A stretch of DNA of 64,000 nt. It comes from Pseudomonas aeruginosa PAO1 (GTDB taxonomy: Bacteria; Pseudomonadota; Gammaproteobacteria; Pseudomonadales; Pseudomonadaceae). This document shows, in pieces, positions 37,262-52,211 of this stretch. The stretch lies in NCBI RefSeq assembly GCF_000006765.1, contig NC_002516.2; one strand, given 5' to 3'. The first letter of the stretch is position 1. Each line of letters begins with the position of its first letter. The notes beneath the pieces were generated by a model. That model saw nothing but the letters and a program-made list of their open reading frames with translations. It was not told the DNA's origin and did not search any database. A program made the translations under genes and the position numbers.

Positions 37262-37290
37262 AAAGAGCCCGCGGAACGCGGGCTCTTTTC
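37262..37290. terminator. Terminator AAAGAGCCCGCG-GAA-CGCGGGCTCTTTT
   Basis: Stem between the convergent thrH and pabB. Confidence 0.8.
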
Positions 37291-38651
37291 TATTCCGGGG
37301 ACGCTGTCCCGGCCATTCCTTCCAGGGTTTCCAGCAGCACCCGGACCTTGTCCAGGGTTTCCTGGTACTCGTCCTCCCAGTGCGAGTCGGCGACGATGCC
37401 GCCGCCGCCCCAGCAACTGACCTGGCCGTCCCTGACCAGCAGGGTGCGGATGGCGATCGAGCTGTCCATCTCGCCGCGCACGTCGAGGTAGAACAGGCTG
37501 CCGCAGTAGATGCCGCGTCGGCTCGGTTCCAGCTCGTCGATGATCTGCATGGCGCGAATCTTCGGCGCGCCGGTGATCGAGCCGCCGGGGAAGCTGCCTT
37601 CCAGCAGGTCGAGGGCGTCCTTGCCCGGCGCCAGTTCGCCGGTGACGCTGCTCACCAGGTGATGCACGTTGGGATAGCTTTCCAGGGCAAACAGCTCCGG
37701 TACCCGTACGCTGCCAGGTTGGCAACTGCGTCCGATGTCGTTGCGCAGCAGGTCGACGATCATCAGGTTTTCCGCGCGGTCCTTGGGGCTGGCCAGCAGC
37801 GACGCCGCCAGCGCCATGTCCTCCTCGGGGGTCTTGCCGCGCGGGCGGGTGCCCTTGATCGGCCGGGTTTCCACCTTGCCCTTGCCGAGCTTGAGGAAGC
37901 GCTCCGGCGACAGGCTGAGGATCGCGCCGTCGGCCAGTCGCAGGTAGCCGGAGAACGGCGTCGGGCAGGCCTCGCGCAGGGCGCGATAGGCCGGCCACGG
38001 CGAGCCGCTGCAAGCGGCCTGGAAGCGCTGGCTATAGTTCACCTGGTAGCAGTCGCCTGCCTGGATGTAGTCCTGGATGCGGCGGATCGCCTGCCGATAG
38101 TCGGATGCGCTGATGCTCCGTCGGAATTTTCCCAGAAGCTTGAAGTTGCCGGCCGTGCCTTGCGCTTCCTCGCTGAACAGGGCGATCAGGCGCTGGCGTT
38201 CGCGCTCGTCCAATCGCGGGTGGAATACCAGTTGGCTGGTGCCGGCCTGGTGGTCGCTGATCAGCGCCCAGGCATACAGGCCGACGGAGGCCAGCGGCAG
38301 GCCCAGGTCATCGCGGGCGTGTTCGCCGATGCGCTCGATGCGCCGACCCAGGTCGTAGGATAAATAGCCCAGCAGACCGCCGGCGAAGGGCAGTTCGTAC
38401 GGCGCTGGCAGCTGCGCGGGGCCCAGGCTTCCGGCCGCTTCGCGTAGGCGGGCGAAGAAGCGGTTGGCCGATTCGTCGGGCAGCGGCGCCAGTTCTGCCA
38501 ATGGCCAGGCGCTCATAAGGTCATAGCGTCCACGGGTAGCGATGGGGCGACCCGAATCGAGCATCACCGCACCGGGCGCCTCATGGATGATGGCAAAGAG
38601 ACAGCTTGGGTCGCTATGGTAGGGCAGGGGGTGAACATGACAACTGGGCAT
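37290..38651 (-). CDS. pabB: Aminodeoxychorismate synthase component I
   Basis: GDCYQVN, SPERF, PIKGT, ENLMIVDLLRND, FPGGSITGAPK. Confidence 0.93.
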   Translation of the reverse strand: MPSCHVHPLPYHSDPSCLFAIIHEAPGAVMLDSGRPIATRGRYDLMSAWPLAELAPLPDESANRFFARLREAAGSLGPAQLPAPYELPFAGGLLGYLSYDLGRRIERIGEHARDDLGLPLASVGLYAWALISDHQAGTSQLVFHPRLDERERQRLIALFSEEAQGTAGNFKLLGKFRRSISASDYRQAIRRIQDYIQAGDCYQVNYSQRFQAACSGSPWPAYRALREACPTPFSGYLRLADGAILSLSPERFLKLGKGKVETRPIKGTRPRGKTPEEDMALAASLLASPKDRAENLMIVDLLRNDIGRSCQPGSVRVPELFALESYPNVHHLVSSVTGELAPGKDALDLLEGSFPGGSITGAPKIRAMQIIDELEPSRRGIYCGSLFYLDVRGEMDSSIAIRTLLVRDGQVSCWGGGGIVADSHWEDEYQETLDKVRVLLETLEGMAGTASPE

Positions 38652-38752: not shown

Positions 38753-41521
38753 ATGGAAATATCCCACGGAGATTTGGCTCCGTACCACAATGATAATGAC
38801 ACAGGGATACAGGCCGTGGATGCAGTACAGGATCCAGCAGCCGGCAGCCTTTCGCGCTCCAGAATAGTGCCGCCTCAGGTGCCAGCCGAATATTCTCTTC
38901 GCCCCGCGATCCGCAACCTGCTGGATCGCAATCCCCATTCACGCGTTCTGATGTTTTCCGCACCTGCCGGCTTCGGCAAGACCTGCGCGCTCGCCGCCCT
39001 GGCCAGGGAGCGCACTGTAGCAGACCAGGCGGTGGCCTGGCTGTCGCTGGCCGAAGAAGACGACGACCCCGCCCGTTTCTGCCGGCAGCTCATCGAGGCG
39101 CTGGGCGAAGCCGTGCCGCAGCTTGGCGACGACGCCCAGACCTACCTGCAGAACACCATGCGGGTCCCGGTGGTGGCGGTGATCGAAAGCCTGCTCGGCG
39201 ATCTCGATCGCTATGCGCGGCCGTTGCTGCTGGTGCTGGACGACCTGCACCTGGTTAGCAACCCGGACATCTTCACCGGCCTCAACCGCCTGGTGCAGTA
39301 CGCACCGCCCGGGCTGGTCCTGGCCCTGGGCACGCGTTCGCAGCCGGCGCTGAGCCTGGCTACCTGGCGGGCCAAGGGACTGTTGCTGGAAATCGGCCTC
39401 GAGGAGCTGCGCCTCGGCTTCGAGGAAACCCGCGAATACCTCGAGCGCAGCGGTCTCTATCTGGACGAGCCCTGCCTGAAGGCGCTCTATGGCCAGACCG
39501 AAGGCTGGGTGGTGGGCGTGCATCTCGTCAGCCTGTGGCTGCGCCAGCAACCGCAGGTGCAGGAAATGGCCCTGCTCGACGGCGACAAGCAGGCGGTCAG
39601 CGCCTATCTGCTGGCGGCGGTCTTCGAACGCTTGCCTGGCGACCTGCAGGAAGCGCTGCTGGCCCTTGGCGTTGCCAGCCAATTGAGCGGCGACCTGGCC
39701 AACGCCCTGACCGGGCGCCAGGACGGCCAGGCGCTGCTGGAGCGCCTGGAGTCCATGCAATTGTTCCTCCTGCCGCTGGATCGCGAACGCCAGTGGTATC
39801 GCTTCCACCTGCTGTTCGCCGACTTCCTCCGCAACCGCCTGCGCGACTCCGATCCGGACCGTTTCAAGCAACTGCATTTCAACGCCAGCCTGTGGTTCAC
39901 CAACCACCACATGCCGACGTTCGCCATCGAGCATGCCTGTGCGGCGGAAGACCCGGAGATGATCGCCGCGCTGGTCGACGGATGCGGACTGGAGCTGATC
40001 AACCGCGGCCAGCTCAGCCTGATCTACCGTTGGCGCAAGCATGTGCCGGACGAAATCGCCGAGCGCTATCCGATCCTGGTCCTTACCGATGTCTGGTCGC
40101 GGGCCAGCGACCTCAGCCTGGGCGAGGCCAACCGGATCATCGACGAACTGCTGGCGCGCTGGGGGGAGAGCCGCGGCGACGGGCCGATGGGCGACCAGTA
40201 CCTCTCCGCGCTGGCGGTGAAGGCGGTGGTGGCGTTGCAGAAGGACGATCTGGAACTGTGCATCGCCCTGGCTCGCCGGGTCGAAGTCCAGCTCGGGCAG
40301 AACGCTGCCTTCCTCGAAGTGGCGGTGTTGATCACTGCCGCGCTGGCCCAGGTGGTCCGTGGCCAGGGCGACCAGGCGCGGCGCCTGCTGGGGCTGGCGC
40401 AGCAGCGCAATCATTTCCTCGAAGGGCGCTACCTGGACATGCAACTGGCCAACGTCGAGGTGATCCTCGCACTCGAGCAGGGCCAGGTGAAGCAGGCGCA
40501 ACTGCTCATCGAGCGGCTCCGCCAGCGTGCCCGGCCGCTGTTCGAGAAGTCCAGGAGCGCGCTGGCGCTGCCGACCATCACCGAGGCCCTGACCGCCTAC
40601 TACAGGATCGAGCTGGACGGGCTGGAAGAGCGCCTGGGCTGGGCGCTCGGGCATGTGGATGTGATCAATCCGATCGATTTCTATGCCCAGGGGCAGATCT
40701 GCCTGGCGCGCACCCAGCGCCTGCTGGGACGGCCGAAGGAGGCGCTGGCCAGCCTGGCGGCGATGCAGGCCCTGGCCTCGCGCAATCAGTCGTGGCGCTT
40801 CTTCGCCCAGGCCATGGCCGAAGAGATCAACCTGATCCTCCAGGACAGCGGCCCCGACCGCCTGAAGCGCGCCGAGCAGCGGTTGAAGAGCGTGGACTGG
40901 AACAAGATGGCGGCACACTACCGCAACATGGCCTTCAACCCGGTCAACTGGTCGCTGGGTGTGAGCCGCGTGCGCCTGTTGCAGGGGCGAGGACATTTCA
41001 GCGAGGCGCTGCACGAGATCACTCAGTTGCGCGGCACCTTGCAGCCCGGTTGGCATGGCCTGCAGCGCCTGCGCCTGGATATCCTGGCGGCGCTCAGCTA
41101 TCAGCGCCTGGGCTACCAGGAACGGGCCAACAGCCTGCTCGGCGAATGCCTGATCAATGCCGAACGGGAAGGGGTGCGCAGCCTCTTCATCGAGGAAGGC
41201 GACGGCATTCGCCAGTTGCTCCAGCAACTCGAATCCACCGAGCGCCAGCCGGCGCTACAGACCTTCATTCGCGGCCTGCTCGGCATCTGGCCCGGGCAGG
41301 GCGTGCGCAAGCCCCAGGATGCGCTCGAGGAAGGCCTGACGGAGCGCGAGCGCGAAGTGGTCTGCCTGGCCGCACAGGGCCTATCCAACGAAGAAATCGG
41401 CCAGCGCCTGTCGCTGGCCCTGGGGACCGTCAAATGGCATCTGCACAACATCTACGAAAAGCTCAAGGTGCGCAATCGCACCCAGGCGATCCGGCGAGCC
41501 CGCGAGCTGAGCCTGCTCTGA
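38753..41521 (+). CDS. MalT-type STAND ATPase-TPR-LuxR regulator (copy 1)
   Basis: Walker A APAGFGKT, Walker B LLLVLDDLH, QWYRFHLLF, C-terminal LTERE...VKWHLHNIYEKL HTH. Confidence 0.9.
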   Translation: MEISHGDLAPYHNDNDTGIQAVDAVQDPAAGSLSRSRIVPPQVPAEYSLRPAIRNLLDRNPHSRVLMFSAPAGFGKTCALAALARERTVADQAVAWLSLAEEDDDPARFCRQLIEALGEAVPQLGDDAQTYLQNTMRVPVVAVIESLLGDLDRYARPLLLVLDDLHLVSNPDIFTGLNRLVQYAPPGLVLALGTRSQPALSLATWRAKGLLLEIGLEELRLGFEETREYLERSGLYLDEPCLKALYGQTEGWVVGVHLVSLWLRQQPQVQEMALLDGDKQAVSAYLLAAVFERLPGDLQEALLALGVASQLSGDLANALTGRQDGQALLERLESMQLFLLPLDRERQWYRFHLLFADFLRNRLRDSDPDRFKQLHFNASLWFTNHHMPTFAIEHACAAEDPEMIAALVDGCGLELINRGQLSLIYRWRKHVPDEIAERYPILVLTDVWSRASDLSLGEANRIIDELLARWGESRGDGPMGDQYLSALAVKAVVALQKDDLELCIALARRVEVQLGQNAAFLEVAVLITAALAQVVRGQGDQARRLLGLAQQRNHFLEGRYLDMQLANVEVILALEQGQVKQAQLLIERLRQRARPLFEKSRSALALPTITEALTAYYRIELDGLEERLGWALGHVDVINPIDFYAQGQICLARTQRLLGRPKEALASLAAMQALASRNQSWRFFAQAMAEEINLILQDSGPDRLKRAEQRLKSVDWNKMAAHYRNMAFNPVNWSLGVSRVRLLQGRGHFSEALHEITQLRGTLQPGWHGLQRLRLDILAALSYQRLGYQERANSLLGECLINAEREGVRSLFIEEGDGIRQLLQQLESTERQPALQTFIRGLLGIWPGQGVRKPQDALEEGLTEREREVVCLAAQGLSNEEIGQRLSLALGTVKWHLHNIYEKLKVRNRTQAIRRARELSLL

Positions 41522-41523
41522 CC

Positions 41524-44247
41524 ATGGGCCATCGCGACGGTGTTCCCGCCAGCACCATTCCGCTGTTGCAGACCAAGCTGTTCCCGCCAGGCGCCGGAGG
41601 GCTGCCGCTGCTGCCCCGCCAGGCGCTGATCGACCGCCTGTACGAGGCCCGCGGGCGACGCGCGATGGTGCTCAGCGCGCCGGCCGGCTTCGGCAAGAGC
41701 ACCATCCTCTGCCAGTTGCGCCTGCGCCTGCTGGAGCAGGGCGCGGCGGTGGCATGGTTGTCCTGCGACGAGACCGACAGCGAACCGCAGCGTCTGATCC
41801 AGTACCTGCTGGCGAGCATCCAGCGAGTGGTCCCGGCATTCGGCGGCAATACCGCCAATCTGCTCGGCACCGACGTCGCGGTGCCGCTGGAGGGTATCCT
41901 GGATGCCTTCCTCGCCGACCTGCGTCGCCTGGAAGGCCCCTTGTACCTGTTCCTCGACGATTTCCACCGCATCCGCCACGCCGCCTTGCCGCATGGGGTT
42001 CGCTACCTGATCGAGAACCTGCCCGATCACGTGCGGGTGGTGGCCTCGACCCGCTTCCGCCCGCGCTTCCTGGTCGACGAGCCGACCCTCAAGCCCTGGA
42101 CCTTCTGCCTGAGCGCGGAAGACCTGCGGCTATCGCGCGAGGAGAGCGATGCGTTTCTCCTCGACCTCAAGGGGCTGGAGCTGGGCGAGCGCGAGCTGAA
42201 GCTGCTGTTCAAGCGCACCGAAGGCTGGATCACGGCGTTGCACCTGGCGGCCCTGGCCCTCAGTCGCAATACCGACCGGGAAGGTTTCCTCCTCGGGCTC
42301 TCCGGGACCGAACGGAACATCGCCGACTACCTGGCGGAAGACGTGCTGGCCAGCCTGCCCGCCGACCTGCAGCTGTTCCTCGACCAGACCTCGGTGCTCG
42401 ATGAGTTCAATGCGGAACTGTGCAATGCGCTGACCGGGCGTCGCGACGGCCTGGACATGCTCATGCGCCTGCAGAACGAGCAGTTGTTCGTCATCGCCCT
42501 GGACGACCAGCGCGAATGGTTCCGCTACCACCATCTGTTCGCCGAGTTCCTCCAGGGGCGGCTGTCCCGGCATGCCGATCCGACCCCGTTGCTGCATGCG
42601 GCGGCGCGCTGGTGCGAGGGGCGCGACCTGGCCGACCGGGCGATCAAGTACGCCCTTCGCGCCCGCGACTACCTGTTCGCCGCCGAGTTGCTGGAGCGCC
42701 AGGGCGCGCGCCTGATCGCCGGTAACCGGGTGTACGGCATCCTCGGCATGCTCAACGGCATTCCCGCCGAGGTGATCCGCGAGCATCCAGTGTTCCAGAT
42801 CTTCTACGCCTGGCAACTGGCGTTCGAGCAACGCTTCGCCGAGGCCGAGGCGTTGATCGAGGAGGTCAGCCACCGCCTCTTGCAGGGGCGCGGCAAGGTC
42901 ATGCACTTCGGGCTCGGCGAGTTGCTCGCCGCCGCCCAGGTGCTCAAGGCCCTGGTGTTGCTCTACCAGGACAAGCTCGAAGCCTGCCTGAAGGTCGCCC
43001 GTCACTGGCTGTCCATGGTCCCGAGCAACCAGCCGGTGTTCCGCGCCAGCCTGCTCTGCGTGCAGGCTTCGGCGCATGCGCTGCTCGGCGACTACGCCGA
43101 GGCCGCCGGCGCCATCGGTTCCGCGCGGGAGGACCTGAAAGTCGCCGACAGCGAGTACCTGCAGGTGGTGACCAGCCTGATCGAATCCCTGATCTGCAAG
43201 GAGAGTGGCGACCTGGAGCGGGGCAGGGCGATCGCCGAGTCGGCGCGCAACCGGGTCGAGCAGGTATTCGGCCGGCGCAGCCGGGTCGGCGGACCCTTGT
43301 CGCTGGCCTATGCCGACCTGCTCTACGAGCAGGACCGGCATGCCGGCGTGCTCGCCGAACTACCGCTGGCGACGGTCTGGCGGGATGTCGCGACGCCGGT
43401 GGAACTGCTCAGTCGCGGCCAGTTGGTCATGGCCAAGGCGCGCTTCTTCTCCGGCGCCGCCGAGCAGGGGCTGGCGCAACTCGACGAATGGCTGAGCGGT
43501 CTGCTCTCGCCCGGCTACGAGCGTGTCTATGCTCACGCCATGAGCTGCAAGGTGCAGTTCCTGCTGTGGCTGCGCCGTCCGAACGAAGCCGAACGGGTCT
43601 GCCTGCAACTGGAGCGGCATCTTGCCGGGCTCTCCGGCGAGCGGCATGCCGACGCACAGACCGCCCTGGTCCTGGCGGAGGCTCGGCTGGCATTGTCCGA
43701 GCGTCACGCGGAACGCGCGCAGAGCAAGCTGGAAAGCTGTCTGGCCGGCTACTCTTCCGCTTACCAGAGGGATCGGCGGCTGCGTTTGTCCTTGTTACTT
43801 TCTGTGGCGTATTGGCAGAAAGGTAACAGCGAAAAAGCCATCGGCCTGTTCCTCGCCACGCTCGAGGAAGCCTGGAATCTCGGCTACCGCCGGCTGTTCC
43901 AGGACGACGCGTTGTGGCTGTTGCCGATGTGGGAAAGCTGGAGGGAAGCGGAGCCCAAGCGTGCCGCGGCCTGGCAGGGGCTGGCCGACCTGCTCCGCGA
44001 GCAGTGCCGGAAGCTCTCCGTGGACCCGGAAAGTTTCGATGAAAATCAGGATGTTAGCCATCGCGAACGGGAAATCCTGCGGCTGGTGGCGGCGGGCTTG
44101 TCGAACCGCGATATCGCGCAGGCGGTGCACCTGTCGGAAGCCACCATCAAGTGGCACCTGCACAACCTGTTCGCCAAGCTGGGTGTGAAGAGCAGAACGC
44201 AAGCCGTACTAAAGGGTAAAAGCCTGGGACTGCTGAGCGAGGCGTGA
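41524..44247 (+). CDS. MalT-type STAND ATPase-TPR-LuxR regulator (copy 2), 907 aa
   Basis: ATG 2 nt after the stop of copy 1; APAGFGKS, LFLDDFH, WFRYHHLF, IKWHLHNLFAKL. Confidence 0.9.
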   Translation: MGHRDGVPASTIPLLQTKLFPPGAGGLPLLPRQALIDRLYEARGRRAMVLSAPAGFGKSTILCQLRLRLLEQGAAVAWLSCDETDSEPQRLIQYLLASIQRVVPAFGGNTANLLGTDVAVPLEGILDAFLADLRRLEGPLYLFLDDFHRIRHAALPHGVRYLIENLPDHVRVVASTRFRPRFLVDEPTLKPWTFCLSAEDLRLSREESDAFLLDLKGLELGERELKLLFKRTEGWITALHLAALALSRNTDREGFLLGLSGTERNIADYLAEDVLASLPADLQLFLDQTSVLDEFNAELCNALTGRRDGLDMLMRLQNEQLFVIALDDQREWFRYHHLFAEFLQGRLSRHADPTPLLHAAARWCEGRDLADRAIKYALRARDYLFAAELLERQGARLIAGNRVYGILGMLNGIPAEVIREHPVFQIFYAWQLAFEQRFAEAEALIEEVSHRLLQGRGKVMHFGLGELLAAAQVLKALVLLYQDKLEACLKVARHWLSMVPSNQPVFRASLLCVQASAHALLGDYAEAAGAIGSAREDLKVADSEYLQVVTSLIESLICKESGDLERGRAIAESARNRVEQVFGRRSRVGGPLSLAYADLLYEQDRHAGVLAELPLATVWRDVATPVELLSRGQLVMAKARFFSGAAEQGLAQLDEWLSGLLSPGYERVYAHAMSCKVQFLLWLRRPNEAERVCLQLERHLAGLSGERHADAQTALVLAEARLALSERHAERAQSKLESCLAGYSSAYQRDRRLRLSLLLSVAYWQKGNSEKAIGLFLATLEEAWNLGYRRLFQDDALWLLPMWESWREAEPKRAAAWQGLADLLREQCRKLSVDPESFDENQDVSHREREILRLVAAGLSNRDIAQAVHLSEATIKWHLHNLFAKLGVKSRTQAVLKGKSLGLLSEA

Positions 44248-44478: not shown

Positions 44479-44916
44479 ATGAAAAAGCACCTGTTCCTTG
44501 CAACTGCTGTTCTGGCTGCTCCCTTGCTGGCGCATGCCGACCTGAAAGCCATGGACGATGGCGCGCTGTCCGACGTGACCGGCCAGGCAGGCATCAGCAT
44601 TTCCGGTACTTTCCAGGGCTCCGTCGGGGCCGTGACCTACACCGATACCGACACCAACGGCGGCTCCCTGCGGCTGGAGAACATCAGCCTGCCGGCGCTG
44701 ACCATCGACGATACCAAGCCGCTGACCATCGACGTCGTCACCACCGATATCGGCGGCAAGTCGACCCAGCAACTGGCCATCGGCCTGCCGGCCATCACCG
44801 GCGACGTGACCGTTGGCGCCATCAAGGTGGGCGACACCAGCGCCGCCAGCATCGGCTCGCTGACCGTCTCCGGGCTGAACATGGCCGGTTCCACCATCAA
44901 GGTCTGGGGTCACTGA
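44479..44916 (+). CDS. Secreted beta-rich DUF6160/FilA-like protein, 145 aa
   Basis: SD TGGAG; signal peptide (AHA); AMDDGALSDVTGQAG motif; G/S/T/I/V-rich; ends KVWGH. Confidence 0.75.
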   Translation: MKKHLFLATAVLAAPLLAHADLKAMDDGALSDVTGQAGISISGTFQGSVGAVTYTDTDTNGGSLRLENISLPALTIDDTKPLTIDVVTTDIGGKSTQQLAIGLPAITGDVTVGAIKVGDTSAASIGSLTVSGLNMAGSTIKVWGH

Positions 44917-44994
44917 TCCAGGAACCGAGTCGAGACGCGAAGACCTCGCCGAGGCATCGGCGGGGTCTTTCTCCGAAAGAGGTACGACGGGGCG

Positions 44995-45756
44995 ATGTTC
45001 GAGATTTTGCTGGGAAGTCTGATCGGACTGTTCGGGTTCACCCAGACGGTCGATACCAAGCCGCAACCGCAGGGCACGGTCAACCTCAGCCAGCCTCTGA
45101 CCCCCAATGGACCCTACCGCGAATCGGTGCAACTGGAGCCGATGAGCCAGTTGCAGTTCCGCAACGTCATCCGCCAGGCCTATGACTACAGCTGCGGCTC
45201 GGCGGCGCTTACCACGCTGCTGGACTACTACCTCGGGCGCAACCTCGAGGAACGCCAGGTCATGGAAGGGCTGCTGCGCTATGGCGAGGCCGATAAGATC
45301 GTGCAGCGCCGCGGTTTCTCGCTGCTCGACATGAAGCGCTACGCCGCTGCGCTGGGCTACAAGAGCGGTGGTTTTCGCGCCGAGTTCAGCGACCTGGACG
45401 CTCTCGAGCATCCGGCGCTGGTCCCCATCCACTATGCCGGCTTCAAGCATTTCGTGGTGGTGCGCGATGTCTACAACGATCACGTCTTCGTCGCCGATCC
45501 GGCCTTGGGCAACATCAGCTTCACCCGGACGCGCTTCGAGGAAATCTGGGACCAGAACGTCCTGTTCGTGATCTTCCCGAGTGGGCAGGAGCCCCGCAAC
45601 GCGCTGGCGCTGAACGATCGCGACATGCGCCTGGTGGACGACCGCACCGTCAGCCTGCTGGCGTTCCGCGAGTTTCCGCAGATCAACAAGATCACTGAAA
45701 ACCAGGTCCGTGAGCTGGGCACTGGTGGCGACGTCATACACCTGCGCACCAAGTAG
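44995..45756 (+). CDS. Stand-alone C39 peptidase (FapD/FilB-like)
   Basis: RQAYDYSCGSAAL (Cys), GFSLLDMKRY, FKHFVVV (His), VADPALG (Asp); no ABC domain. Confidence 0.88.
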   Translation: MFEILLGSLIGLFGFTQTVDTKPQPQGTVNLSQPLTPNGPYRESVQLEPMSQLQFRNVIRQAYDYSCGSAALTTLLDYYLGRNLEERQVMEGLLRYGEADKIVQRRGFSLLDMKRYAAALGYKSGGFRAEFSDLDALEHPALVPIHYAGFKHFVVVRDVYNDHVFVADPALGNISFTRTRFEEIWDQNVLFVIFPSGQEPRNALALNDRDMRLVDDRTVSLLAFREFPQINKITENQVRELGTGGDVIHLRTK

Positions 45757-46841: not shown

Positions 46842-48440
46842 ATGAAGATGCGCATTGCGCCGCTCTGGCTGGCGCTGGCAGGGGTGTGCCTGGCCTGGAT
46901 TCCGCCGGCCGGCGCGCAGATGGCCAACGACCTGACCATCGGCAACCCGAAAGCCATGGCCCTCGGCAACGCCGTGACCGCCGACGAGACCGGCATCGAT
47001 TCGGTGCACTACAACCCGGCGGCGCTGACCAGGATGAAGGGCCGCCAGGCGACCGTGAAGCTGCTCACCGGGGTGATGGACATCCGCGCCGGCTTCAAGG
47101 CGCCGCCGAACTACGGCGAAGGCACCTTCGGCCTGCGCGACGACCCGGTTGCCAACAGCCACAGCCGGACCCTGACCCCGACCATGTACCTGCCCGGTCT
47201 CGGCGGCATGACCGACGTGCCGTTGCTGGTGGCGCCGCTGGCCGGGATCTCGATCAACCCGCCGGGCTCCAAGTTCACCTTCGCCACCAACGTCTACACC
47301 CCGCAAGCGCTGGGCTACAGCCGCGATTCCGATAGCGATCCGGCGCGCTACCAGGGACGCGAGGTGTCGTTGCAGCGGCTCACCTACTTCTCGCCGACCC
47401 TGGCCTACCAGGTCAACGACGAGCTGTCGGTCGGCCTGTCGGTGGGTTTCTCCCACCAGGCAGTAGCGTTGAACGAGGATTTCCGGGCGCCGAACCAGTT
47501 GCTCGGGCTGTTGCAGCAGACCAAGGAGATCGGTTGCCTGCCGGGAATGCAGGAGATCCTCGAGGTGTTCTTCAACGTCTGCGGCGGCAATATCGGTCCG
47601 TTCCAGAACCTGGCCAATATCGATCTGGACATGCAACAGTCGCTTTCGCCCAGCTTCAACCTCGGCGTGCTCTGGGAGCCCACCGACTGGTTCGCCTGGG
47701 GCGCGACCTACCAGAGCGAGTCGCGGATGAGGCTCAAGGGCAAGTACCGGGTCGACTACGGCCAGGGCTGGCAGGGTTTCTGGACCGGGGTGCACAAGTC
47801 GCTCGGCGGTGCGATCCTCGGCCAGATGTTCCCCTACGGGAACGTCGACGAAGAGCATGGCAACGCCACGATGAACATGGTCTATCCGGATGCCTTCTCC
47901 ACCGGCGTGAAGCTGCGCCCGTTCAAGAAGTGGCAATTCAACTTCGACCTGAAATGGAACGGCTACAGCGACTGGAACGAGTTCAAGATCGAGTTCGACC
48001 GCGAGCTCGACCTGCTGCGCATCGCCAAGTACCTCGACTCGAAGGACGCCACCAGCCACAGCATCACCCTCGACCGCGGCTACCGCGATACCTGGAGCTG
48101 GGCCATGGGCGTGCAGTACGACGTCAACGACCGTTTGCAGCTGCGCGCCGGCTACGAATACCGGCCTTCGGCGATCCCCAAGGGCCAGGCGGACATCCTG
48201 GTGCCGATCGGCGATGCCAATCTCTACGGCCTGGGGCTGGGCTACCAGTGGGACAAGGACACGGTGATCGATGTCGGTTTCAACTACTTCGTCACCAAGC
48301 AGAGCGTCAAGGCCGATAACAGCTGCAACCTGAACTGCACCGGGCTCGACAACCTGGTGTACAACCCCTACGCGGGACTGGACGTGGACACCACGGTGAA
48401 GGCCTATATTTTCGCCATGACCTACCGTACGACCTTCTGA
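46842..48440 (+). CDS. FadL/OmpP1/TodX-type outer-membrane channel, 532 aa
   Basis: AMALGNAVTA...HYNPAAL hatch, alternating beta-strands, C-terminal Phe (YRTTF). Confidence 0.82.
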   Translation: MKMRIAPLWLALAGVCLAWIPPAGAQMANDLTIGNPKAMALGNAVTADETGIDSVHYNPAALTRMKGRQATVKLLTGVMDIRAGFKAPPNYGEGTFGLRDDPVANSHSRTLTPTMYLPGLGGMTDVPLLVAPLAGISINPPGSKFTFATNVYTPQALGYSRDSDSDPARYQGREVSLQRLTYFSPTLAYQVNDELSVGLSVGFSHQAVALNEDFRAPNQLLGLLQQTKEIGCLPGMQEILEVFFNVCGGNIGPFQNLANIDLDMQQSLSPSFNLGVLWEPTDWFAWGATYQSESRMRLKGKYRVDYGQGWQGFWTGVHKSLGGAILGQMFPYGNVDEEHGNATMNMVYPDAFSTGVKLRPFKKWQFNFDLKWNGYSDWNEFKIEFDRELDLLRIAKYLDSKDATSHSITLDRGYRDTWSWAMGVQYDVNDRLQLRAGYEYRPSAIPKGQADILVPIGDANLYGLGLGYQWDKDTVIDVGFNYFVTKQSVKADNSCNLNCTGLDNLVYNPYAGLDVDTTVKAYIFAMTYRTTF

Positions 48441-48450
48441 GGGCTGGAGC

Positions 48451-49641
48451 ATGATGCGCGCATCCATCGTACTTTGCGTCTTCTCCCTGGCGCTGCCGGC
48501 ATCTTCGCCGGGCTGGGCCTCCGGCGGGCGCTACCTGACTTGGGTGGACGACAATGGCGGGGTGCACAACACCTTCGTCGACGGCCAGTTCGACCGCCAG
48601 CAGCGCCAGGCGCGGCAGCGCATCGGCCAGAGCGACCAGGCGCGGGTGCTGAACAAGGCGGACAACGCCACGCAGTGGCCGGGGAACAGCAGCGGAGGGG
48701 AGAGCAAGCGTCGCTACTACACCTGGATCGATGCCAACGGCAACGTGCAGAACAGCTTCTATGCCGGCGCCCAGGTCGCCGGCCAGCGCGCCGACTACGT
48801 CCTGCCCAACGGCGAGCACTCCGCCGAATACATCGATGCCGAGGCCTTCGAGGGCAAGGGTTTCGTTCGCAGCGAGAACGGCAGTCCCTACTACACCTGG
48901 GTGGACGAGAAGGGCCGCATGCACAACTCGCAGATCCCGCCCGAGGAGCGCGCGGCGCGCTTCAAGCGGGAGGCCGCACCTTCGTCGCAGATCGCCTTCA
49001 CCGAGGGCCGGCAGATCGAGTTCAAGCAGCGTCCGGCGGCGTTGCCCGGCCTGGATGGCGCCGGCCAGCAGAGCGATGCGCTGAAGGCTTTGCTCAAGGG
49101 CACCGAGATGACCATCGACGATCTCTACCAGGACCTGCAACGGCGCTGCTGCGAGCAGATCGCCGAGAGCGACTTCACCGAACTGGATGCCGACGAACCG
49201 CGCTACGAGGAGTTGAACCGCTTCTCGCCGAGCTTCGACTTTCCCATGGGCAGGAGCTTCTACGCGGCGATCCGGCTGCCGCGCTCCCAGGGTGTCTACG
49301 GCCTGCGCATCCGCAGTTTCGCCAACCGCCAGGTGGTCTACCCGTCGCTGCTGTTCCTCGACGAGCACAAGCGGCCGACCCGGCTGGTCAGCGACGCGGT
49401 GTACAAGCTGAACCCGGAAACCTGGTATCGCTACGCTTTCATCGAGGGTACGGTGCCGGTGCGAGCCAATCGCGGCGAGCGCTACGTGCTGCTGCTGACC
49501 ACCGACGAGGACCGCTCGCTGCAAACCCTCGACAACAAGCCGTTCAAGCGTCCGCTGCAGGACCTGGCGGTGAACGAGGCGGGTATGCAGGTGCATGAGC
49601 ACGCCCGGCAGGGCGGCTTCGAGCTGGCCGTGGTGCGTTGA
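48451..49641 (+). CDS. Exported protein with three YxTW[VI]DxxG repeats and a MalM/FilE-like C-domain
   Basis: Signal peptide; repeats at 48529, 48712 and 48886; C-terminal YGLRIRSF...VYPSLLFLDE. Confidence 0.65.
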   Translation: MMRASIVLCVFSLALPASSPGWASGGRYLTWVDDNGGVHNTFVDGQFDRQQRQARQRIGQSDQARVLNKADNATQWPGNSSGGESKRRYYTWIDANGNVQNSFYAGAQVAGQRADYVLPNGEHSAEYIDAEAFEGKGFVRSENGSPYYTWVDEKGRMHNSQIPPEERAARFKREAAPSSQIAFTEGRQIEFKQRPAALPGLDGAGQQSDALKALLKGTEMTIDDLYQDLQRRCCEQIAESDFTELDADEPRYEELNRFSPSFDFPMGRSFYAAIRLPRSQGVYGLRIRSFANRQVVYPSLLFLDEHKRPTRLVSDAVYKLNPETWYRYAFIEGTVPVRANRGERYVLLLTTDEDRSLQTLDNKPFKRPLQDLAVNEAGMQVHEHARQGGFELAVVR

Positions 49642-49697: not shown

Positions 49698-50681
49698 TCA
49701 GCCCTGGTGCTGCTGGACGTGGCCGAACAGCTGCTGGGAGAAGCGTACGCGCTCTTCCGCGGACTCTTCGATGCCTTTCGCCTTGAGTTCTTCCAGTCGC
49801 GCCTCGACGGCGTGGCAGCGGTGCACCAGGCCGCTGTCGTTGGCGATCTGGATGTTCAGGCCCGGGCGGGCGTTGAGTTCGAGGATCAGCGGGCCTTTCT
49901 CCTGGTCGAGAACCATGTCCACGCCGATGTAGCCGAGGCCCGACAACTCGTAGCAACCGGCCGCCAGCTTCATGAAGCCGTCCCAGTTCGGCAGTTGCAC
50001 GCCGTCCACCGCGTTGGTGGTGTCCGGGTGCTTGGCGATCTTGTTGTTCAGCCAGGTGCCGCGCAGGGTGACACCGGTGGCCAGGTCGACGCCCACGCCG
50101 ATGGCGCCCTGGTGCAGGTTGGCCTTGCCGCCCGACTGCCGGGTCGGCAGGCGCAGCATGGCCATCACCGGGTAGCCCATCAGTACGATGATGCGGATGT
50201 CCGGCACACCTTCGTAGCTGATGCTCTTGAAGATCTGGTCGGGGGTCACCCGGTACTCGATCAGTACGCGGTCGCGATGGCCGCCGAGGGAGTAGAGGCC
50301 GGAGAGGATGCTCGAGATGTGGTGCTCGATCTCCTCGTGGCTGACGATCTTCCCCGACACGGTCTTGTAGCGGCCCTCGAAGCGGTCGGCGATCACCATG
50401 ATGCCGTCGCCGCCGGCGCCCTGCGCCGGCTTGATGACGAAATCGTTGTGCTCGCCGATGATCTCGTTGAGCTTGTCGATGCCTTTCTCGGTCTCGATGA
50501 TGCCGTACATCTCCGGCACGTGGATGCCGGCCTCGAGCGCGCGTTCCTTGGTGATGATCTTGTCGTCCACCACCGGATACAGGTGCCGCTTGTTGTACTT
50601 CAGGACGTAATCGGCATTGCGTCGGTTGATGCCCATCACGCCTTTCGCGGTCAGGTCTTTCCAGGTCTTCCAGATCGACAT
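49698..50681 (-). CDS. RimK-related alpha-L-glutamate ligase-like ATP-grasp protein
   Basis: VIKPAQGAGGDGI, KANLHQG, GYIGVD, LELNARPG. Confidence 0.85.
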   Translation of the reverse strand: MSIWKTWKDLTAKGVMGINRRNADYVLKYNKRHLYPVVDDKIITKERALEAGIHVPEMYGIIETEKGIDKLNEIIGEHNDFVIKPAQGAGGDGIMVIADRFEGRYKTVSGKIVSHEEIEHHISSILSGLYSLGGHRDRVLIEYRVTPDQIFKSISYEGVPDIRIIVLMGYPVMAMLRLPTRQSGGKANLHQGAIGVGVDLATGVTLRGTWLNNKIAKHPDTTNAVDGVQLPNWDGFMKLAAGCYELSGLGYIGVDMVLDQEKGPLILELNARPGLNIQIANDSGLVHRCHAVEARLEELKAKGIEESAEERVRFSQQLFGHVQQHQG

Positions 50682-50684
50682 GGT

Positions 50685-52211
50685 TCAGTCCTTGAGCAGG
50701 GCCTTGAAGCGGAACAGCTCGGTCAGGCGGTAGCCGCGGTAGCGGCCCATGGCGAGCATGAAGGCGACCAGGATCAGCAGCACGGCCGGGAAGGTGAAGA
50801 TGAAGTACACCAGTTCCGGGATGCGCATGAGGATGTGCGCCAGCGATGCCGCGAACAGGGTGCCGATGGCCACCTTCATCGCATGGCCGCCGCCGCGCTC
50901 TTCCCAGGTGATCGACAGGCGTTCGATGGTCATGGTCAGGATCACCATCGGGAACAGGGCGATCGACAGGCCGCTCTCGAAGCCGAGCTTGTGGCTGAAC
51001 AGGCTGATCACCGCGATCATCACCACCACGAAGGTCAGCACCACCGAGAGGCGCGGCAGCATCTGCAGCTTCAGGTGCTCGAGATAGGAGCGCAGCGACA
51101 GGCCCAGGGCGGTGATCACGGTGAACAGGGCGATACCCCATTGCAGGCCGGTCTCGCGGAAGGCCAGGGCGATCAGAACCGGGGTGAAGGTGCCAAGGGT
51201 CTGCAGGCCGATCAGGTTGCGCAGGATCAGGATCACCAGCACGCCGATCGGGATCATGATCATGATCTGGAAGGTCTGCTGGGTGGACAGCGGCAGGCCG
51301 TACAGGGAGTACTCGAGGAAGGCCGCCTCGGTGTTCTCGTCGGACAGCTTGGCCAGGCGGATGGCGTTCATCTCGCTGCTGTTCAGGCTGAAGCTGACCT
51401 GGGCCTTCTTGCCGCCGTCGATGGTCATCAGCGGCTCATCGCCAAGCCACCAGATCAGGCGATCGGAGGGCAGGCCCTGTTCGCCGGTGACCACGTTGAA
51501 ATACAGCCAGTTCTCGCCGTTGAAGCTGCGCAGCCACAGTTCCGGGCTCTGTTGCAGGTCGGCGACCAGGCGGATGGTATGGACCCGCTCCATCGGCACG
51601 TGGGCGATGGACAGCAGGGTTTCGACGATATGCGCTTTCTTTTCCAGGCTGGTGTCGCCGGCCATCAGCAGCTTGACGTTGTCGTCGTTGCCGTTGTTGG
51701 CGCGCTTGATGGCTTCGCTGACGAAGGTCTCGACGTCGGCCGAGTGCTGGCGAATGGGGGCCAGCAGGGCTTCTGCGGCGATCTTCTCCGGGCCTTCCAG
51801 GGGCAGGCTGTCGCGGAAGATCGGGCCTTTCTCCTTGGTCTTCTCGCCGGTGTAGCGCTTGGTCAGCACCAGGCGGTAATACAGGGTCTGCTTGCCGTTG
51901 GCGCGGCGGGCGGACCAGGTCACCTTGCGATTGCCGTCGGCGCGATTGATGCTGACGCCGTAATTGTTGGAGACGAAGCTTTCGTTGAGGCTGACGTAGT
52001 CCTGGCTCAACGGCGGAACGAACATCTGCACCTTGACCGGGGTTTTCGGCGTGGCGACGAAGTCGACCTTGGCATCGATGTTCCAGAGGTCATCGGTTTC
52101 GGCTTCGGTAACGGGAATACCCTGGACGAAAATCTGATAGGCGGTGATCGCCACACCCAGGGTCAGCAGGATGGCGATCAGGACTTTCAGATGCAGGTTG
52201 AGAGAGCGCAT
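50685..52211 (-). CDS. Inactive transglutaminase fused to a 7TM domain
   Basis: N-terminal TM, periplasmic domain, seven C-terminal TM segments (GTFTPVLIALAF, LFPMVILTMTIER). Confidence 0.82.
   Translation of the reverse strand: MRSLNLHLKVLIAILLTLGVAITAYQIFVQGIPVTEAETDDLWNIDAKVDFVATPKTPVKVQMFVPPLSQDYVSLNESFVSNNYGVSINRADGNRKVTWSARRANGKQTLYYRLVLTKRYTGEKTKEKGPIFRDSLPLEGPEKIAAEALLAPIRQHSADVETFVSEAIKRANNGNDDNVKLLMAGDTSLEKKAHIVETLLSIAHVPMERVHTIRLVADLQQSPELWLRSFNGENWLYFNVVTGEQGLPSDRLIWWLGDEPLMTIDGGKKAQVSFSLNSSEMNAIRLAKLSDENTEAAFLEYSLYGLPLSTQQTFQIMIMIPIGVLVILILRNLIGLQTLGTFTPVLIALAFRETGLQWGIALFTVITALGLSLRSYLEHLKLQMLPRLSVVLTFVVVMIAVISLFSHKLGFESGLSIALFPMVILTMTIERLSITWEERGGGHAMKVAIGTLFAASLAHILMRIPELVYFIFTFPAVLLILVAFMLAMGRYRGYRLTELFRFKALLKD

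What the first reader, a model, noticed from the sequence alone, without database searches (positions are those of the whole stretch)
44551..44586. Double-glycine-like leader hidden after the subunit's signal peptide
After the predicted AHA cleavage site the chain reads DLKA-MDDGALSDVTGQ-AG. Counting G as -2, hydrophobic residues fall at -4 (V), -7 (L) and -12 (M). This is the register of C39-cleaved double-glycine leaders, with Q in place of G/A/S at -1. The next gene is a C39 peptidase with Cys, His and Asp intact. Inference: two-step processing, in which the periplasmic C39 removes a propeptide to license export or polymerisation.
Basis: partly seen in the sequence, partly recalled or inferred. 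Interest (0 to 1): 0.7.

Follow-up and report, generated by a model that had tools for sequence, protein, structure and literature searches.

The report
Propeptide on a pilus subunit
A small secreted Pseudomonas protein carries, after its signal peptide, a 16-residue tag shaped like the leaders that C39 peptidases cut; the next gene is such a peptidase, and a solved filament of a relative starts exactly after the tag.

Summary
Window 44479-44916 encodes a 145-aa DUF6160 protein (PA1761-like). It has a signal peptide (1-20, AHA|D), then a 16-residue segment DLKAMDDGALSDVTGQ, then a beta-rich domain.

In 129 family representatives (clusters at 50% identity) these positions are 85-97% hydrophobic. 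G(-2) and Q(-1) are each 95%, and the spacing from the AxA signal-peptidase site is fixed.

The next gene is a C39 peptidase with invariant Gln/Cys/His/Asp and a double-glycine-peptidase fold. FapF-like, FadL-like and MalM-like genes follow.

In related operons, up to four otherwise unrelated secreted proteins upstream of the peptidase share only this tag, ending GQ, AA, GR or GA.

The key evidence is PDB 9XFV, a native environmental filament. It is 100% identical to residues 38-210 of a 210-aa precursor, so it starts immediately after ...VSGQ. Its gene lies in a homologous operon.

Still inferred: that the C39 enzyme makes the cut, that this protein (not only its relative) is cut, and what the cut licenses. 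Some family members have no C39 gene within 10 kb.

The parts
44479..44538 (+). Sec signal peptide of the subunit (residues 1-20, MKKHLFLATAVLAAPLLAHA; predicted signal-peptidase I site AHA|D)
   Evidence: Read directly from the sequence. A-x-A at -19..-17 is conserved across the family. AF2 places a helix at 3-21.
44539..44586 (+). 16-residue double-glycine-type propeptide (residues 21-36, DLKAMDDGALSDVTGQ). Predicted cut is after Q36.
   Evidence: Family profile, invariant G35/Q36, short helix at 27-31 and low pLDDT outside the beta core. The homolog filament 9XFV starts at +1.
44587..44916 (+). Predicted mature filament subunit (residues 37-145, AGISISG...IKVWGH) plus stop codon
   Evidence: Pfam DUF6160 at 81 bits. 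PDB 9xfv_A matches by sequence at E 1.7e-7 and is the only significant fold match (E 5.2e-4, TMq 0.55).
44939..44972 (+). GC-rich 14-bp hairpin between the subunit gene and the peptidase gene (possible partial terminator or mRNA stabiliser)
   Evidence: RNA fold. Not called as a canonical terminator. Its function is inferred only.
44995..45756 (+). Stand-alone C39 cysteine peptidase (PA1762-like, FilB/FapD clade). It has an N-terminal conserved hydrophobic segment and a ~45-residue linker. Catalytic Q61 (45175-45177), C67 (45193-45195), H152 (45448-45450), D168 (45496-45498).
   Evidence: Pfam PF03412 at 73.9 bits. NCBIfam FilB 294 bits and FapD 120 bits, both below cut-off. Catalytic residues invariant in 111 homologs. 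The model's best fold matches are PCAT1, ComA and LahT150 (TMt 0.70-0.77). PA1762 is listed as a C39-domain protein in PMC10613653.
45797..46822 (+). FilC-like / FapF-like outer-membrane protein (presumed secretion pore)
   Evidence: NCBIfam FilC 287 bits and FapF 67 bits, both below cut-off. Always follows the peptidase gene.
46842..48440 (+). FadL/TodX-family outer-membrane barrel (FilD-like)
   Evidence: Pfam Toluene_X at 439 bits. NCBIfam FilD at 515 bits, below cut-off.
48451..49641 (+). Secreted DUF4124 + MalM-domain protein (last gene of the operon)
   Evidence: Pfam MalM 115 bits and DUF4124 41 bits. Conserved position in related loci.
38753..44247 (+). Two tandem MalT-type STAND/LuxR regulators (38753-41521 and 41524-44247) directly upstream; candidate regulators of the operon
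   Evidence: Pfam GerE, TPR_MalT and AAA domains. A MalT-type regulator also neighbours distant DUF6160 loci. Regulation is inferred from position only.

Best explanation
The 145-aa protein is a pre-pro-subunit of an extracellular filament, of the kind solved as 'pilus-like-alpha' (PDB 9XFV).

Step 1 (inferred from sequence): Sec export and signal-peptidase I cleavage at AHA|D.

Step 2 (inferred): the remaining 16-residue N-terminal tag forms a short amphipathic helix. This places L22, M25, L30 and V33 in the hydrophobic groove of the neighbouring C39 peptidase, as double-glycine leaders do in LahT150 and ComA. The peptidase cuts after G35-Q36, so the mature protein starts at A37.

Step 3 (inferred): the mature subunit leaves through the FapF-like and/or FadL-like outer-membrane proteins and polymerises.

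The tag acts as a shared recognition signal. In multi-subunit operons every major and minor subunit carries it, much as type IV prepilins share one leader for one prepilin peptidase.

Shown here: the motif and its conservation; the intact peptidase; the gene linkage; and that a native homologous filament lacks exactly the signal peptide plus tag.
For: - The register matches experimentally defined leader determinants: Leu-12, Leu-7, Val-4, a helix from -4 to -11, and small residues at the cut (PMC6363468). The AF2 model puts a helix at residues 27-31, i.e. -10 to -6, outside the confident beta core.
- Family-wide profile: 85-97% hydrophobic at -15/-12/-7/-4, G(-2) 95%, Q(-1) 95%, fixed 16-residue length.
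- The peptidase has invariant Q61/C67/H152/D168. Its sequence matches 6MPZ and 4RY2, and its best fold matches are double-glycine peptidase domains.
- Linkage: all metagenome loci of the short form with enough flank have FilB, C, D and E directly downstream. All 130 FilB-bearing loci with at least 900 nt upstream have a tag-bearing ORF upstream.
- In L081, L166, L175 and L177, four successive secreted proteins upstream of the peptidase share the tag (ending GQ, AA, GR or GA). Their mature parts are barely alignable: tag identity is 41-52% against about 27%, which is the floor for global alignment.
- 9xfv_A (25 chains, native filament from cave water, 2.9-3.4 A) is 100% identical to residues 38-210 of P0312. 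That precursor reads ...SASAMTAIDDSTLSTVSGQ|DGVSIAGD (PMC12956863).
- The P0312 operon (L177) has homologs of the window's peptidase (E 5e-80), FilC (1e-78) and FilD (2e-141) in the same order.
- The related peptidase FapD works in the periplasm, and its catalytic Cys is needed for secretion (PMC5557850).
Against: - No direct data exist for this protein. The solved homolog is only about 19% identical in the fold alignment.
- The 9XFV model was built into density with the full-length sequence as a guide, so the missing residues could in principle be disordered rather than cleaved. A one-residue uncertainty (G|Q versus Q|D) also remains.
- Q, and R in some minor subunits, at P1 departs from the small residues that the narrow pocket of canonical C39 enzymes demands.
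- About 15 long-form DUF6160 loci with the same tag have no FilB, C, D or E homolog within 10 kb, even at E<10. I could not test whether those genomes encode one elsewhere (one search was uninformative).
- The peptidase N-terminus (MFEILLGSLIGLFGF...) has no basic residue and is sequence-conserved. This is unusual for a signal peptide, so its periplasmic location is inferred.
Confidence: 0.75

Rival explanations
1. The tag is removed at or near GQ, but by a different protease. The neighbouring C39 peptidase processes something else, for example the plug or linker of the FapF-like pore or another machinery protein, as was once proposed for FapD and FapF.
For: Orphan DUF6160 genes keep the same tag with no C39 gene within 10 kb. 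The substrate of FapD was still undetermined in the Fap literature I could read. P1 = Q is atypical for C39 enzymes.
Against: The tag reproduces exactly the positions that C39 enzymes read. Every FilB-bearing locus has a tag-bearing ORF upstream. Unrelated proteins in one operon share only the tag. No other protease gene is conserved in these operons.
Confidence: 0.13
2. The segment is not cleaved in this protein. It is a permanent N-terminal extension, for example a targeting or chaperone-binding helix for the outer-membrane machinery, with the C39 protein acting as a non-cutting receptor like the C39-like domain of HlyB. On this reading its absence from 9XFV reflects disorder.
For: The 9XFV model lists only built residues. 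Non-catalytic C39-like domains that bind substrates are known. Conservation runs on without a break into +2 G, +3 V/I and +5 I.
Against: The catalytic Gln/Cys/His/Asp are invariant in 111 homologs, which argues for an active enzyme. The FapD catalytic Cys is required for secretion. The model boundary in 9XFV coincides to the residue with the predicted cut site, which disorder alone would not be expected to produce.
Confidence: 0.09
3. The resemblance to double-glycine leaders is a chance feature of one sequence.
For: The loose pattern occurs about 10 times in the six-frame translation of the window. Composition-matched shuffles give it somewhere in 30 residues in 0.16% of trials.
Against: The pattern is conserved in register across 129 representatives drawn from 50%-identity clusters, and across unrelated paralogs. 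It always sits next to, or in the same operon as, a C39 gene in the Fil-type loci.
Confidence: 0.02

Closest known systems
Double-glycine leader peptides cut by the C39 domain of peptidase-containing ABC transporters (ComA, LahT, PCAT1)
   Same: Hydrophobic residues at -15/-12/-7/-4, acidic residues between them, Gly at -2, and a leader of about 16 residues. The peptidase has the same fold and the same Gln/Cys/His/Asp.
   Different: The tag lies after a Sec signal peptide, not at the very N-terminus of a cytoplasmic precursor. P1 is Q (or A/R), not G/A/S. The peptidase is a stand-alone protein with an N-terminal hydrophobic segment and no ABC transporter. The cargo is a folded filament subunit, not a bacteriocin or pheromone.
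Pseudomonas Fap functional-amyloid system (FapD periplasmic C39 peptidase + FapF pore)
   Same: A stand-alone C39 peptidase gene lies next to a FapF-like outer-membrane protein gene. FapD acts in the periplasm and its catalytic Cys is needed for secretion.
   Different: Scores are far below the FapD and FapF equivalog cut-offs (120 vs 330; 67 vs 700). There are no FapA/B/C/E homologs. The subunit is a DUF6160 beta-rich protein, and the operon adds FadL-like and MalM-like genes. The papers say Fap proteins lack canonical C39 recognition sequences and that FapD's substrate is undetermined, whereas here the candidate site is explicit.
Acinetobacter 'Fil' putative pilus system (NCBIfam FilA-FilD models NF050077-NF050080)
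   Same: Same gene order (subunit, C39 peptidase, FilC, FadL-like FilD), and all four window proteins hit these models best.
   Different: All four scores are well below the curated cut-offs (51/220, 294/475, 287/630, 515/970). The subunit is about half the length of FilA. I found no published mechanism for Fil.
Pilus-like-alpha, PDB 9XFV (native filament from karst-cave water; PMC12956863)
   Same: Homologous subunit by sequence (E 1.7e-7) and the only significant fold match. The operon is homologous, with the same peptidase, FilC and FilD. The precursor has the same tag ending GQ.
   Different: The 9XFV subunit is longer (173 vs 109 mature residues, with an inserted segment). Its operon has four tagged subunits and an AraC regulator. 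The paper is a methods paper and gives no account of biogenesis.
Type IV prepilins and prepilin peptidase (conceptual analogue; from general knowledge)
   Same: One dedicated peptidase and one short conserved N-terminal leader shared by major and minor subunits, removed before assembly.
   Different: Unrelated enzyme (aspartic membrane protease), cleavage on the cytoplasmic face, unrelated pilin fold and machinery.

Membership tests
Double-glycine (GG) leader peptides | Hydrophobic residues at -4, -7, -12 (and -15) relative to the cut | tested here: met
   V33, L30, M25 and L22. Family-wide 85-97% LIVMF at these positions. Positions as defined in PMC6363468.
Double-glycine (GG) leader peptides | Gly at -2 | tested here: met
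   G35. 95% G and 5% A in 129 representatives. Invariant in the 62-sequence alignment.
Double-glycine (GG) leader peptides | Gly, Ala or Ser at -1 | tested here: not met
   Q36. Q in 95% of the family. A or R occurs only in some minor subunits.
Double-glycine (GG) leader peptides | Leader at the extreme N-terminus of a precursor without a Sec signal, exported by an ABC transporter with a fused C39 domain | tested here: not met
   The tag follows a Sec signal peptide. The peptidase is a 253-aa stand-alone protein, and the operon has no ABC transporter.
Double-glycine (GG) leader peptides | Leader actually removed at the motif | not testable with these tools
   Indirect only: the homolog filament 9XFV begins at +1. 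No data for the window's own protein.
Peptidase family C39 | Catalytic Cys, His and Asp, plus the upstream Gln | tested here: met
   Q61, C67, H152 and D168 align with the LahT and PCAT1 catalytic residues and are invariant in 111 homologs.
Peptidase family C39 | Pfam PF03412 above gathering score, and C39 fold | tested here: met
   73.9 bits against a cut-off of 22. Foldseek best matches are PCAT1, ComA and LahT150, TMt 0.70-0.77.
FapD / FapF (Fap amyloid system) | NCBIfam equivalog scores for FapD and FapF, and presence of FapB/FapC amyloid subunits | tested here: not met
   FapD 120 against 330; FapF 67 against 700. The subunit is DUF6160, not FapC-like.
Acinetobacter Fil system (NCBIfam FilA-D) | Scores above the curated cut-offs of NF050077-NF050080 | tested here: not met
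   51/220, 294/475, 287/630 and 515/970. Same gene order, so this is a related but distinct subfamily.
DUF6160 (Pfam PF19657) | Score above the gathering threshold | tested here: met
   81.1 bits against 27, residues 3-74.
Pilus-like-alpha filament (9XFV) system | Homologous subunit and homologous assembly genes in the same order | tested here: met
   Subunit E 1.7e-7 and the sole significant fold match. The L177 operon matches at FilB 5e-80, FilC 1e-78 and FilD 2e-141.
Pilus-like-alpha filament (9XFV) system | Forms an extracellular helical filament | not testable with these tools
   Shown only for the Burkholderiales homolog (PMC12956863).

The most novel reading that the evidence does not exclude
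DUF6160 subunits, a FilB/FapD-type C39 peptidase and FapF-like plus FadL-like outer-membrane proteins together make up a widespread, so far unclassified class of Gram-negative surface filament. 9XFV would be its first structure. Its subunits would be 'pre-pro-pilins': exported by Sec, then matured in the periplasm by a double-glycine-type peptidase that reads a fixed 16-residue tag ending G-Q. This would give the first explicit substrate rule for the periplasmic C39 clade, whose substrate in the Fap amyloid system has been unknown since 2017. It would also link an anonymous environmental cryo-EM filament to a defined operon present in P. aeruginosa (PA1761-PA1765).
Probability: 0.5. Interest if true: 0.8.

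Novelty: new variant of a known kind. Interest (0 to 1): 0.72.

Why it matters
C39 peptidases are textbook cytoplasmic leader-cutters fused to ABC exporters. A periplasmic branch (FapD) is known to be essential for amyloid secretion, but its substrate is unknown.

This locus offers a concrete, testable substrate and cut site for that branch. It assigns a probable function (filament subunit) to an uncharacterised Pfam family. It connects an anonymous environmental cryo-EM filament to its genes and biogenesis. It also points to an unstudied surface structure in P. aeruginosa.

The tag could serve as a simple sequence rule for finding further substrates, including giant proteins that carry it.

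Tried and rejected
It says little about distant clades.
- The 62-sequence alignment was too diverse for the metagenome scan. A 12-sequence alignment worked.
- I tried to learn whether genomes with orphan DUF6160 genes encode a FilB-like peptidase elsewhere. Local HMMs found none within 10 kb. The last homolog search, with a divergent FilB, was swamped by Pseudomonas hits. This stays unresolved.
- The supplement of the 9XFV paper is not held, so I could not read how the authors treated the N-terminus.
- Literature searches for DUF6160, for FilA/FilB with peptidase, and for C39 with pilus or pilin found no description of this processing.
- The promoter and terminator scan around the subunit gene found nothing.
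- I considered a cut between G35 and Q36. It shifts all hydrophobic positions off the canonical register and does not fit the first residue of 9XFV, so I rejected it as the primary reading.
- None of ten long-form relatives reached the FilA cut-off, so no true Acinetobacter FilA was available for comparison.

Full report
THE SEQUENCE. The finding's coordinates (44551-44586, + strand) translate to MDDGALSDVTGQ, residues 25-36 of a 145-aa protein whose likely start is ATG 44479, preceded by GGAG. The protein reads MKKHLFLATAVLAAPLLAHA | DLKAMDDGALSDVTGQ | AGISISGTF...IKVWGH. The first part is a standard Sec signal peptide with an AHA|D site. The protein is 99% identical to a P. aeruginosa 'DUF6160 family protein'. 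The neighbouring peptidase is PA1762 (Q9I2X7), listed as a C39-domain protein (PMC10613653). The operon is therefore probably PA1761-PA1765; the numbering beyond PA1762 rests on my memory of the PAO1 map, supported by the ppsA-like and pabB-like genes in the window.

CHANCE VERSUS CONSERVATION. For a single sequence the pattern is uncommon but not rare. Composition-matched shuffles give it in the exact register in 1e-4 of trials, and anywhere in 30 residues in 1.6e-3. Conservation settles the question. An exhaustive HMMER search of 1.84 billion cluster representatives found 225 relatives. I anchored 129 of the 148 retrieved representatives on the G-x motif. In these, LIVMF occupies -15, -12, -7 and -4 in 95%, 96%, 97% and 85%. 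G is at -2 in 95% and Q at -1 in 95%, acidic residues dominate -11 and -10, and the other positions vary. An A-x-A signal-peptidase motif sits at -19..-17, so the tag has a fixed length of 16 residues. In a 62-sequence alignment with 32% mean column identity, G35, Q36 and G38 are three of only five invariant columns. Many members read almost exactly like the textbook LSxxELxxIxGG, for example ISDEELGEVTGQ and IQDDELSQVTGQ. The positions match those shown by mutagenesis and by a co-crystal structure to be read by double-glycine peptidases: Leu-12, Leu-7 and Val-4 sit in a hydrophobic groove, residues -4 to -11 form a short helix, and a narrow pocket accepts small P1/P2 residues (PMC6363468). 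An AlphaFold2 model of the window protein (mean pLDDT 78) has a short helix at residues 27-31 (-10 to -6) with pLDDT near 60. The confident beta-rich core begins at residue 39.

THE PEPTIDASE AND THE OPERON. The next gene (44995-45756) matches Pfam Peptidase_C39 (73.9 bits). Its best NCBIfam matches are 'putative pilus system C39 family peptidase FilB' (294 bits, cut-off 475) and FapD (120 bits, cut-off 330). Q61, C67, H152 and D168 align with the catalytic residues of LahT150 and PCAT1 and are invariant in 111 distinct homologs. A model of the protein has a confident core at about residues 65-205. Its best fold matches are the peptidase domains of PCAT1, ComA and LahT150 (TMt 0.70-0.77). The N-terminus (MFEILLGSLIGLFGFTQTVDTKP) is a conserved hydrophobic segment with small-xxx-small spacing and no basic residue, followed by a low-confidence linker. 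I read it as a signal-anchor or an atypical signal peptide. Periplasmic location is inferred from two things: FapD was shown to act in the periplasm (PMC5557850), and the candidate substrates carry Sec signals. Downstream lie a FilC/FapF-like outer-membrane protein, a FadL/TodX-type barrel and a DUF4124+MalM protein. Upstream lie two MalT-type STAND/LuxR regulators.

LINKAGE ACROSS GENOMES. Among 80 genome loci found through the peptidase and 80 metagenome loci found through the subunit, every short-form subunit locus with enough flank has the peptidase, FilC, FilD and the MalM-like gene directly downstream. All 130 loci with a FilB-type gene and at least 900 nt upstream have a tag-bearing secreted ORF upstream on the same strand, at a median of 638 nt from the tag to the catalytic motif. 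Most of these are orthologous Pseudomonas-type operons, so they are not independent counts.

SHARED TAG ON UNRELATED PROTEINS. Four divergent operons are more telling: L081, L166, L175 and L177. In each, four successive secreted proteins precede the peptidase, and each carries the tag at the same distance from its signal peptide. Examples are ..EVTGQ|SG..DIYAA|G..NVEAA|GG and ..QLTAA|EG in L081, and ..VSGQ|DG..VWGQ|AL..VTGR|DG and ..VSGA|GI in L177. Their mature parts are barely alignable: tag identity is 41-52%, against about 27% for the mature parts, which is the floor for global alignments. A segment shared by otherwise unrelated proteins in an operon that encodes a leader peptidase is what a recognition tag looks like. 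The endings show that P2 is G/A and that P1 tolerates Q, A and R.

EVIDENCE FROM A SOLVED STRUCTURE. A sequence search of the PDB with the window protein hit one entry, 9xfv_A ('bacteria pilus (like)', 25 chains, E 1.7e-7). The chain begins at the position equivalent to A37 and ends at the shared C-terminal ...W(G/A)H. It is also the only significant fold match for the subunit model (E 5.2e-4, TMq 0.55). 9XFV is 'pilus-like-alpha', a native filament imaged at 2.9-3.4 A in drip water from a karst cave. Its sequence was read from the density and assigned to a UniProt entry. The paper is about determining handedness and says nothing on biogenesis (PMC12956863).

I recovered the matching precursor, P0312 from Burkholderiales bacterium PBB6. 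It has 210 residues, and residues 38-210 are 100% identical to the 173-residue chain. The precursor begins MKFAKLTAVAAILGALSVSASAMTAIDDSTLSTVSGQ|DGVSIAGD.... The filament model therefore contains everything after GQ and nothing before it. Its gene lies in the operon chorismate-binding enzyme - AraC regulator - four tagged subunits - C39 peptidase - FilC-like - FadL-like. The last three are homologous to the window's genes at E 5e-80, 1e-78 and 2e-141. This is the strongest support for cleavage at the predicted site. It is not proof, because built residues could stop where order stops. Even so, a boundary that coincides to the residue with the predicted cut is unlikely to come from disorder alone.

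CAVEATS. The P1 residue is Q, not G/A/S, so the S1 pocket must differ from that of LahT-type enzymes; I could not examine this. About 15 loci with long-form DUF6160 genes have the same tag but no FilB, C, D or E homolog within 10 kb, even at E<10. These are Marinobacter-type loci sharing the cysB-cysH-thrH-pabB neighbourhood of the window, plus Alkalimarinus coralli. Whether those genomes encode the peptidase elsewhere could not be tested. No experiment bears on the P. aeruginosa protein itself. The literature I could search only lists PA1761/PA1762 as hypothetical genes up 13.5- and 17.9-fold in a rubB mutant (PMC12431658) and PA1762 in an extracellular proteome.

COMPARISON WITH KNOWN SYSTEMS. 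It works like a double-glycine leader with its C39 peptidase. It is not a member of that class as usually defined: the tag lies after a Sec signal, P1 is Q, and no ABC transporter is involved. Its closest experimentally studied relative is the FapD/FapF pair of the Fap amyloid system. There the peptidase is periplasmic and essential, but the substrate is undetermined, and the authors noted that Fap proteins lack canonical C39 sequences. By annotation it is closest to the Acinetobacter Fil system, but all four scores fall well below the curated cut-offs, and I found no published mechanism for Fil. Searches for DUF6160, FilA/FilB with peptidase, and C39 with pilus or pilin returned nothing describing this processing.

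VERDICT. I rate it a new variant of a known kind: a post-Sec, periplasmic, G-Q-type version of double-glycine leader processing, acting on filament subunits. Interest is fairly high because it yields a directly testable substrate rule for the periplasmic C39 clade and ties a structure of unknown origin to its genes.

Noticed in passing
window 44902-44913 (residues 142-145, VWGH): The extreme C-terminus is conserved across the whole family as aromatic-small-His. The final H is at least 90% conserved, and 9XFV ends ...WMWAH. It could be a secretion or subunit-contact signal.
   Followed up: no
window 44939-44972: A 14-bp GC-rich hairpin sits between the subunit gene and the peptidase gene, with only a weak U tract, and is not called as a terminator. 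It might set the ratio of subunit to machinery, as in other pilus operons.
   Followed up: partly
window 44995-45063 (peptidase residues 1-23): The peptidase N-terminus MFEILLGSLIGLFGFTQTVDTKP is conserved in sequence, has a G-xxx-G-xx-G pattern, an acidic residue at position 3 and no basic residue. This is unusual for a signal peptide and suggests a membrane anchor that packs against another helix.
   Followed up: partly
window 37290-38651 (-); also L177 7035-8510, L166 93-1568, L176 7740-9101, L155 6426-7880: A chorismate-binding (PabB/TrpE-like) gene lies just upstream of DUF6160 loci in Pseudomonas, in Burkholderiales and in marine gammaproteobacteria, whether or not the peptidase operon is present. 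Such synteny across classes is unexplained.
   Followed up: no
L134, L144, L155, L161, L176 (about 1-5 kb downstream of the DUF6160 gene); L170 16173-20837: Orphan long-form DUF6160 genes with no C39 nearby lie beside DUF58 plus a TgpA-type transglutaminase-like membrane protein, or beside MoxR-DUF58-VWA genes. The transglutaminase core is also a papain-like cysteine-protease fold. Coincidence or an alternative processing route is untested.
   Followed up: partly
protein P0130 (2,064 aa): A giant protein starts with the same signal peptide plus tag (...KFEMLEDDEMSKVSGR|DGIEIYG), so the tag is not restricted to small subunits.
   Followed up: no
window 38753-41521 and 41524-44247: Two tandem, paralogous 900-residue MalT-type STAND/LuxR regulators lie directly upstream of the operon. 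A similar regulator neighbours the distant orphan loci.
   Followed up: partly
window 49698-50681 (-) and 50685-52211 (-): Convergent with the operon are a RimK-related alpha-L-glutamate ligase-like ATP-grasp gene and an 'inactive transglutaminase fused to 7TM' gene. No link to the filament operon is evident.
   Followed up: no
L153 about 8647 (+): A further secreted ORF about 7 kb from an orphan DUF6160 gene has a tag-like segment QMLAMNEYELQQTTAQ, with A instead of G at -2. It may be a divergent substrate or a chance match.
   Followed up: no
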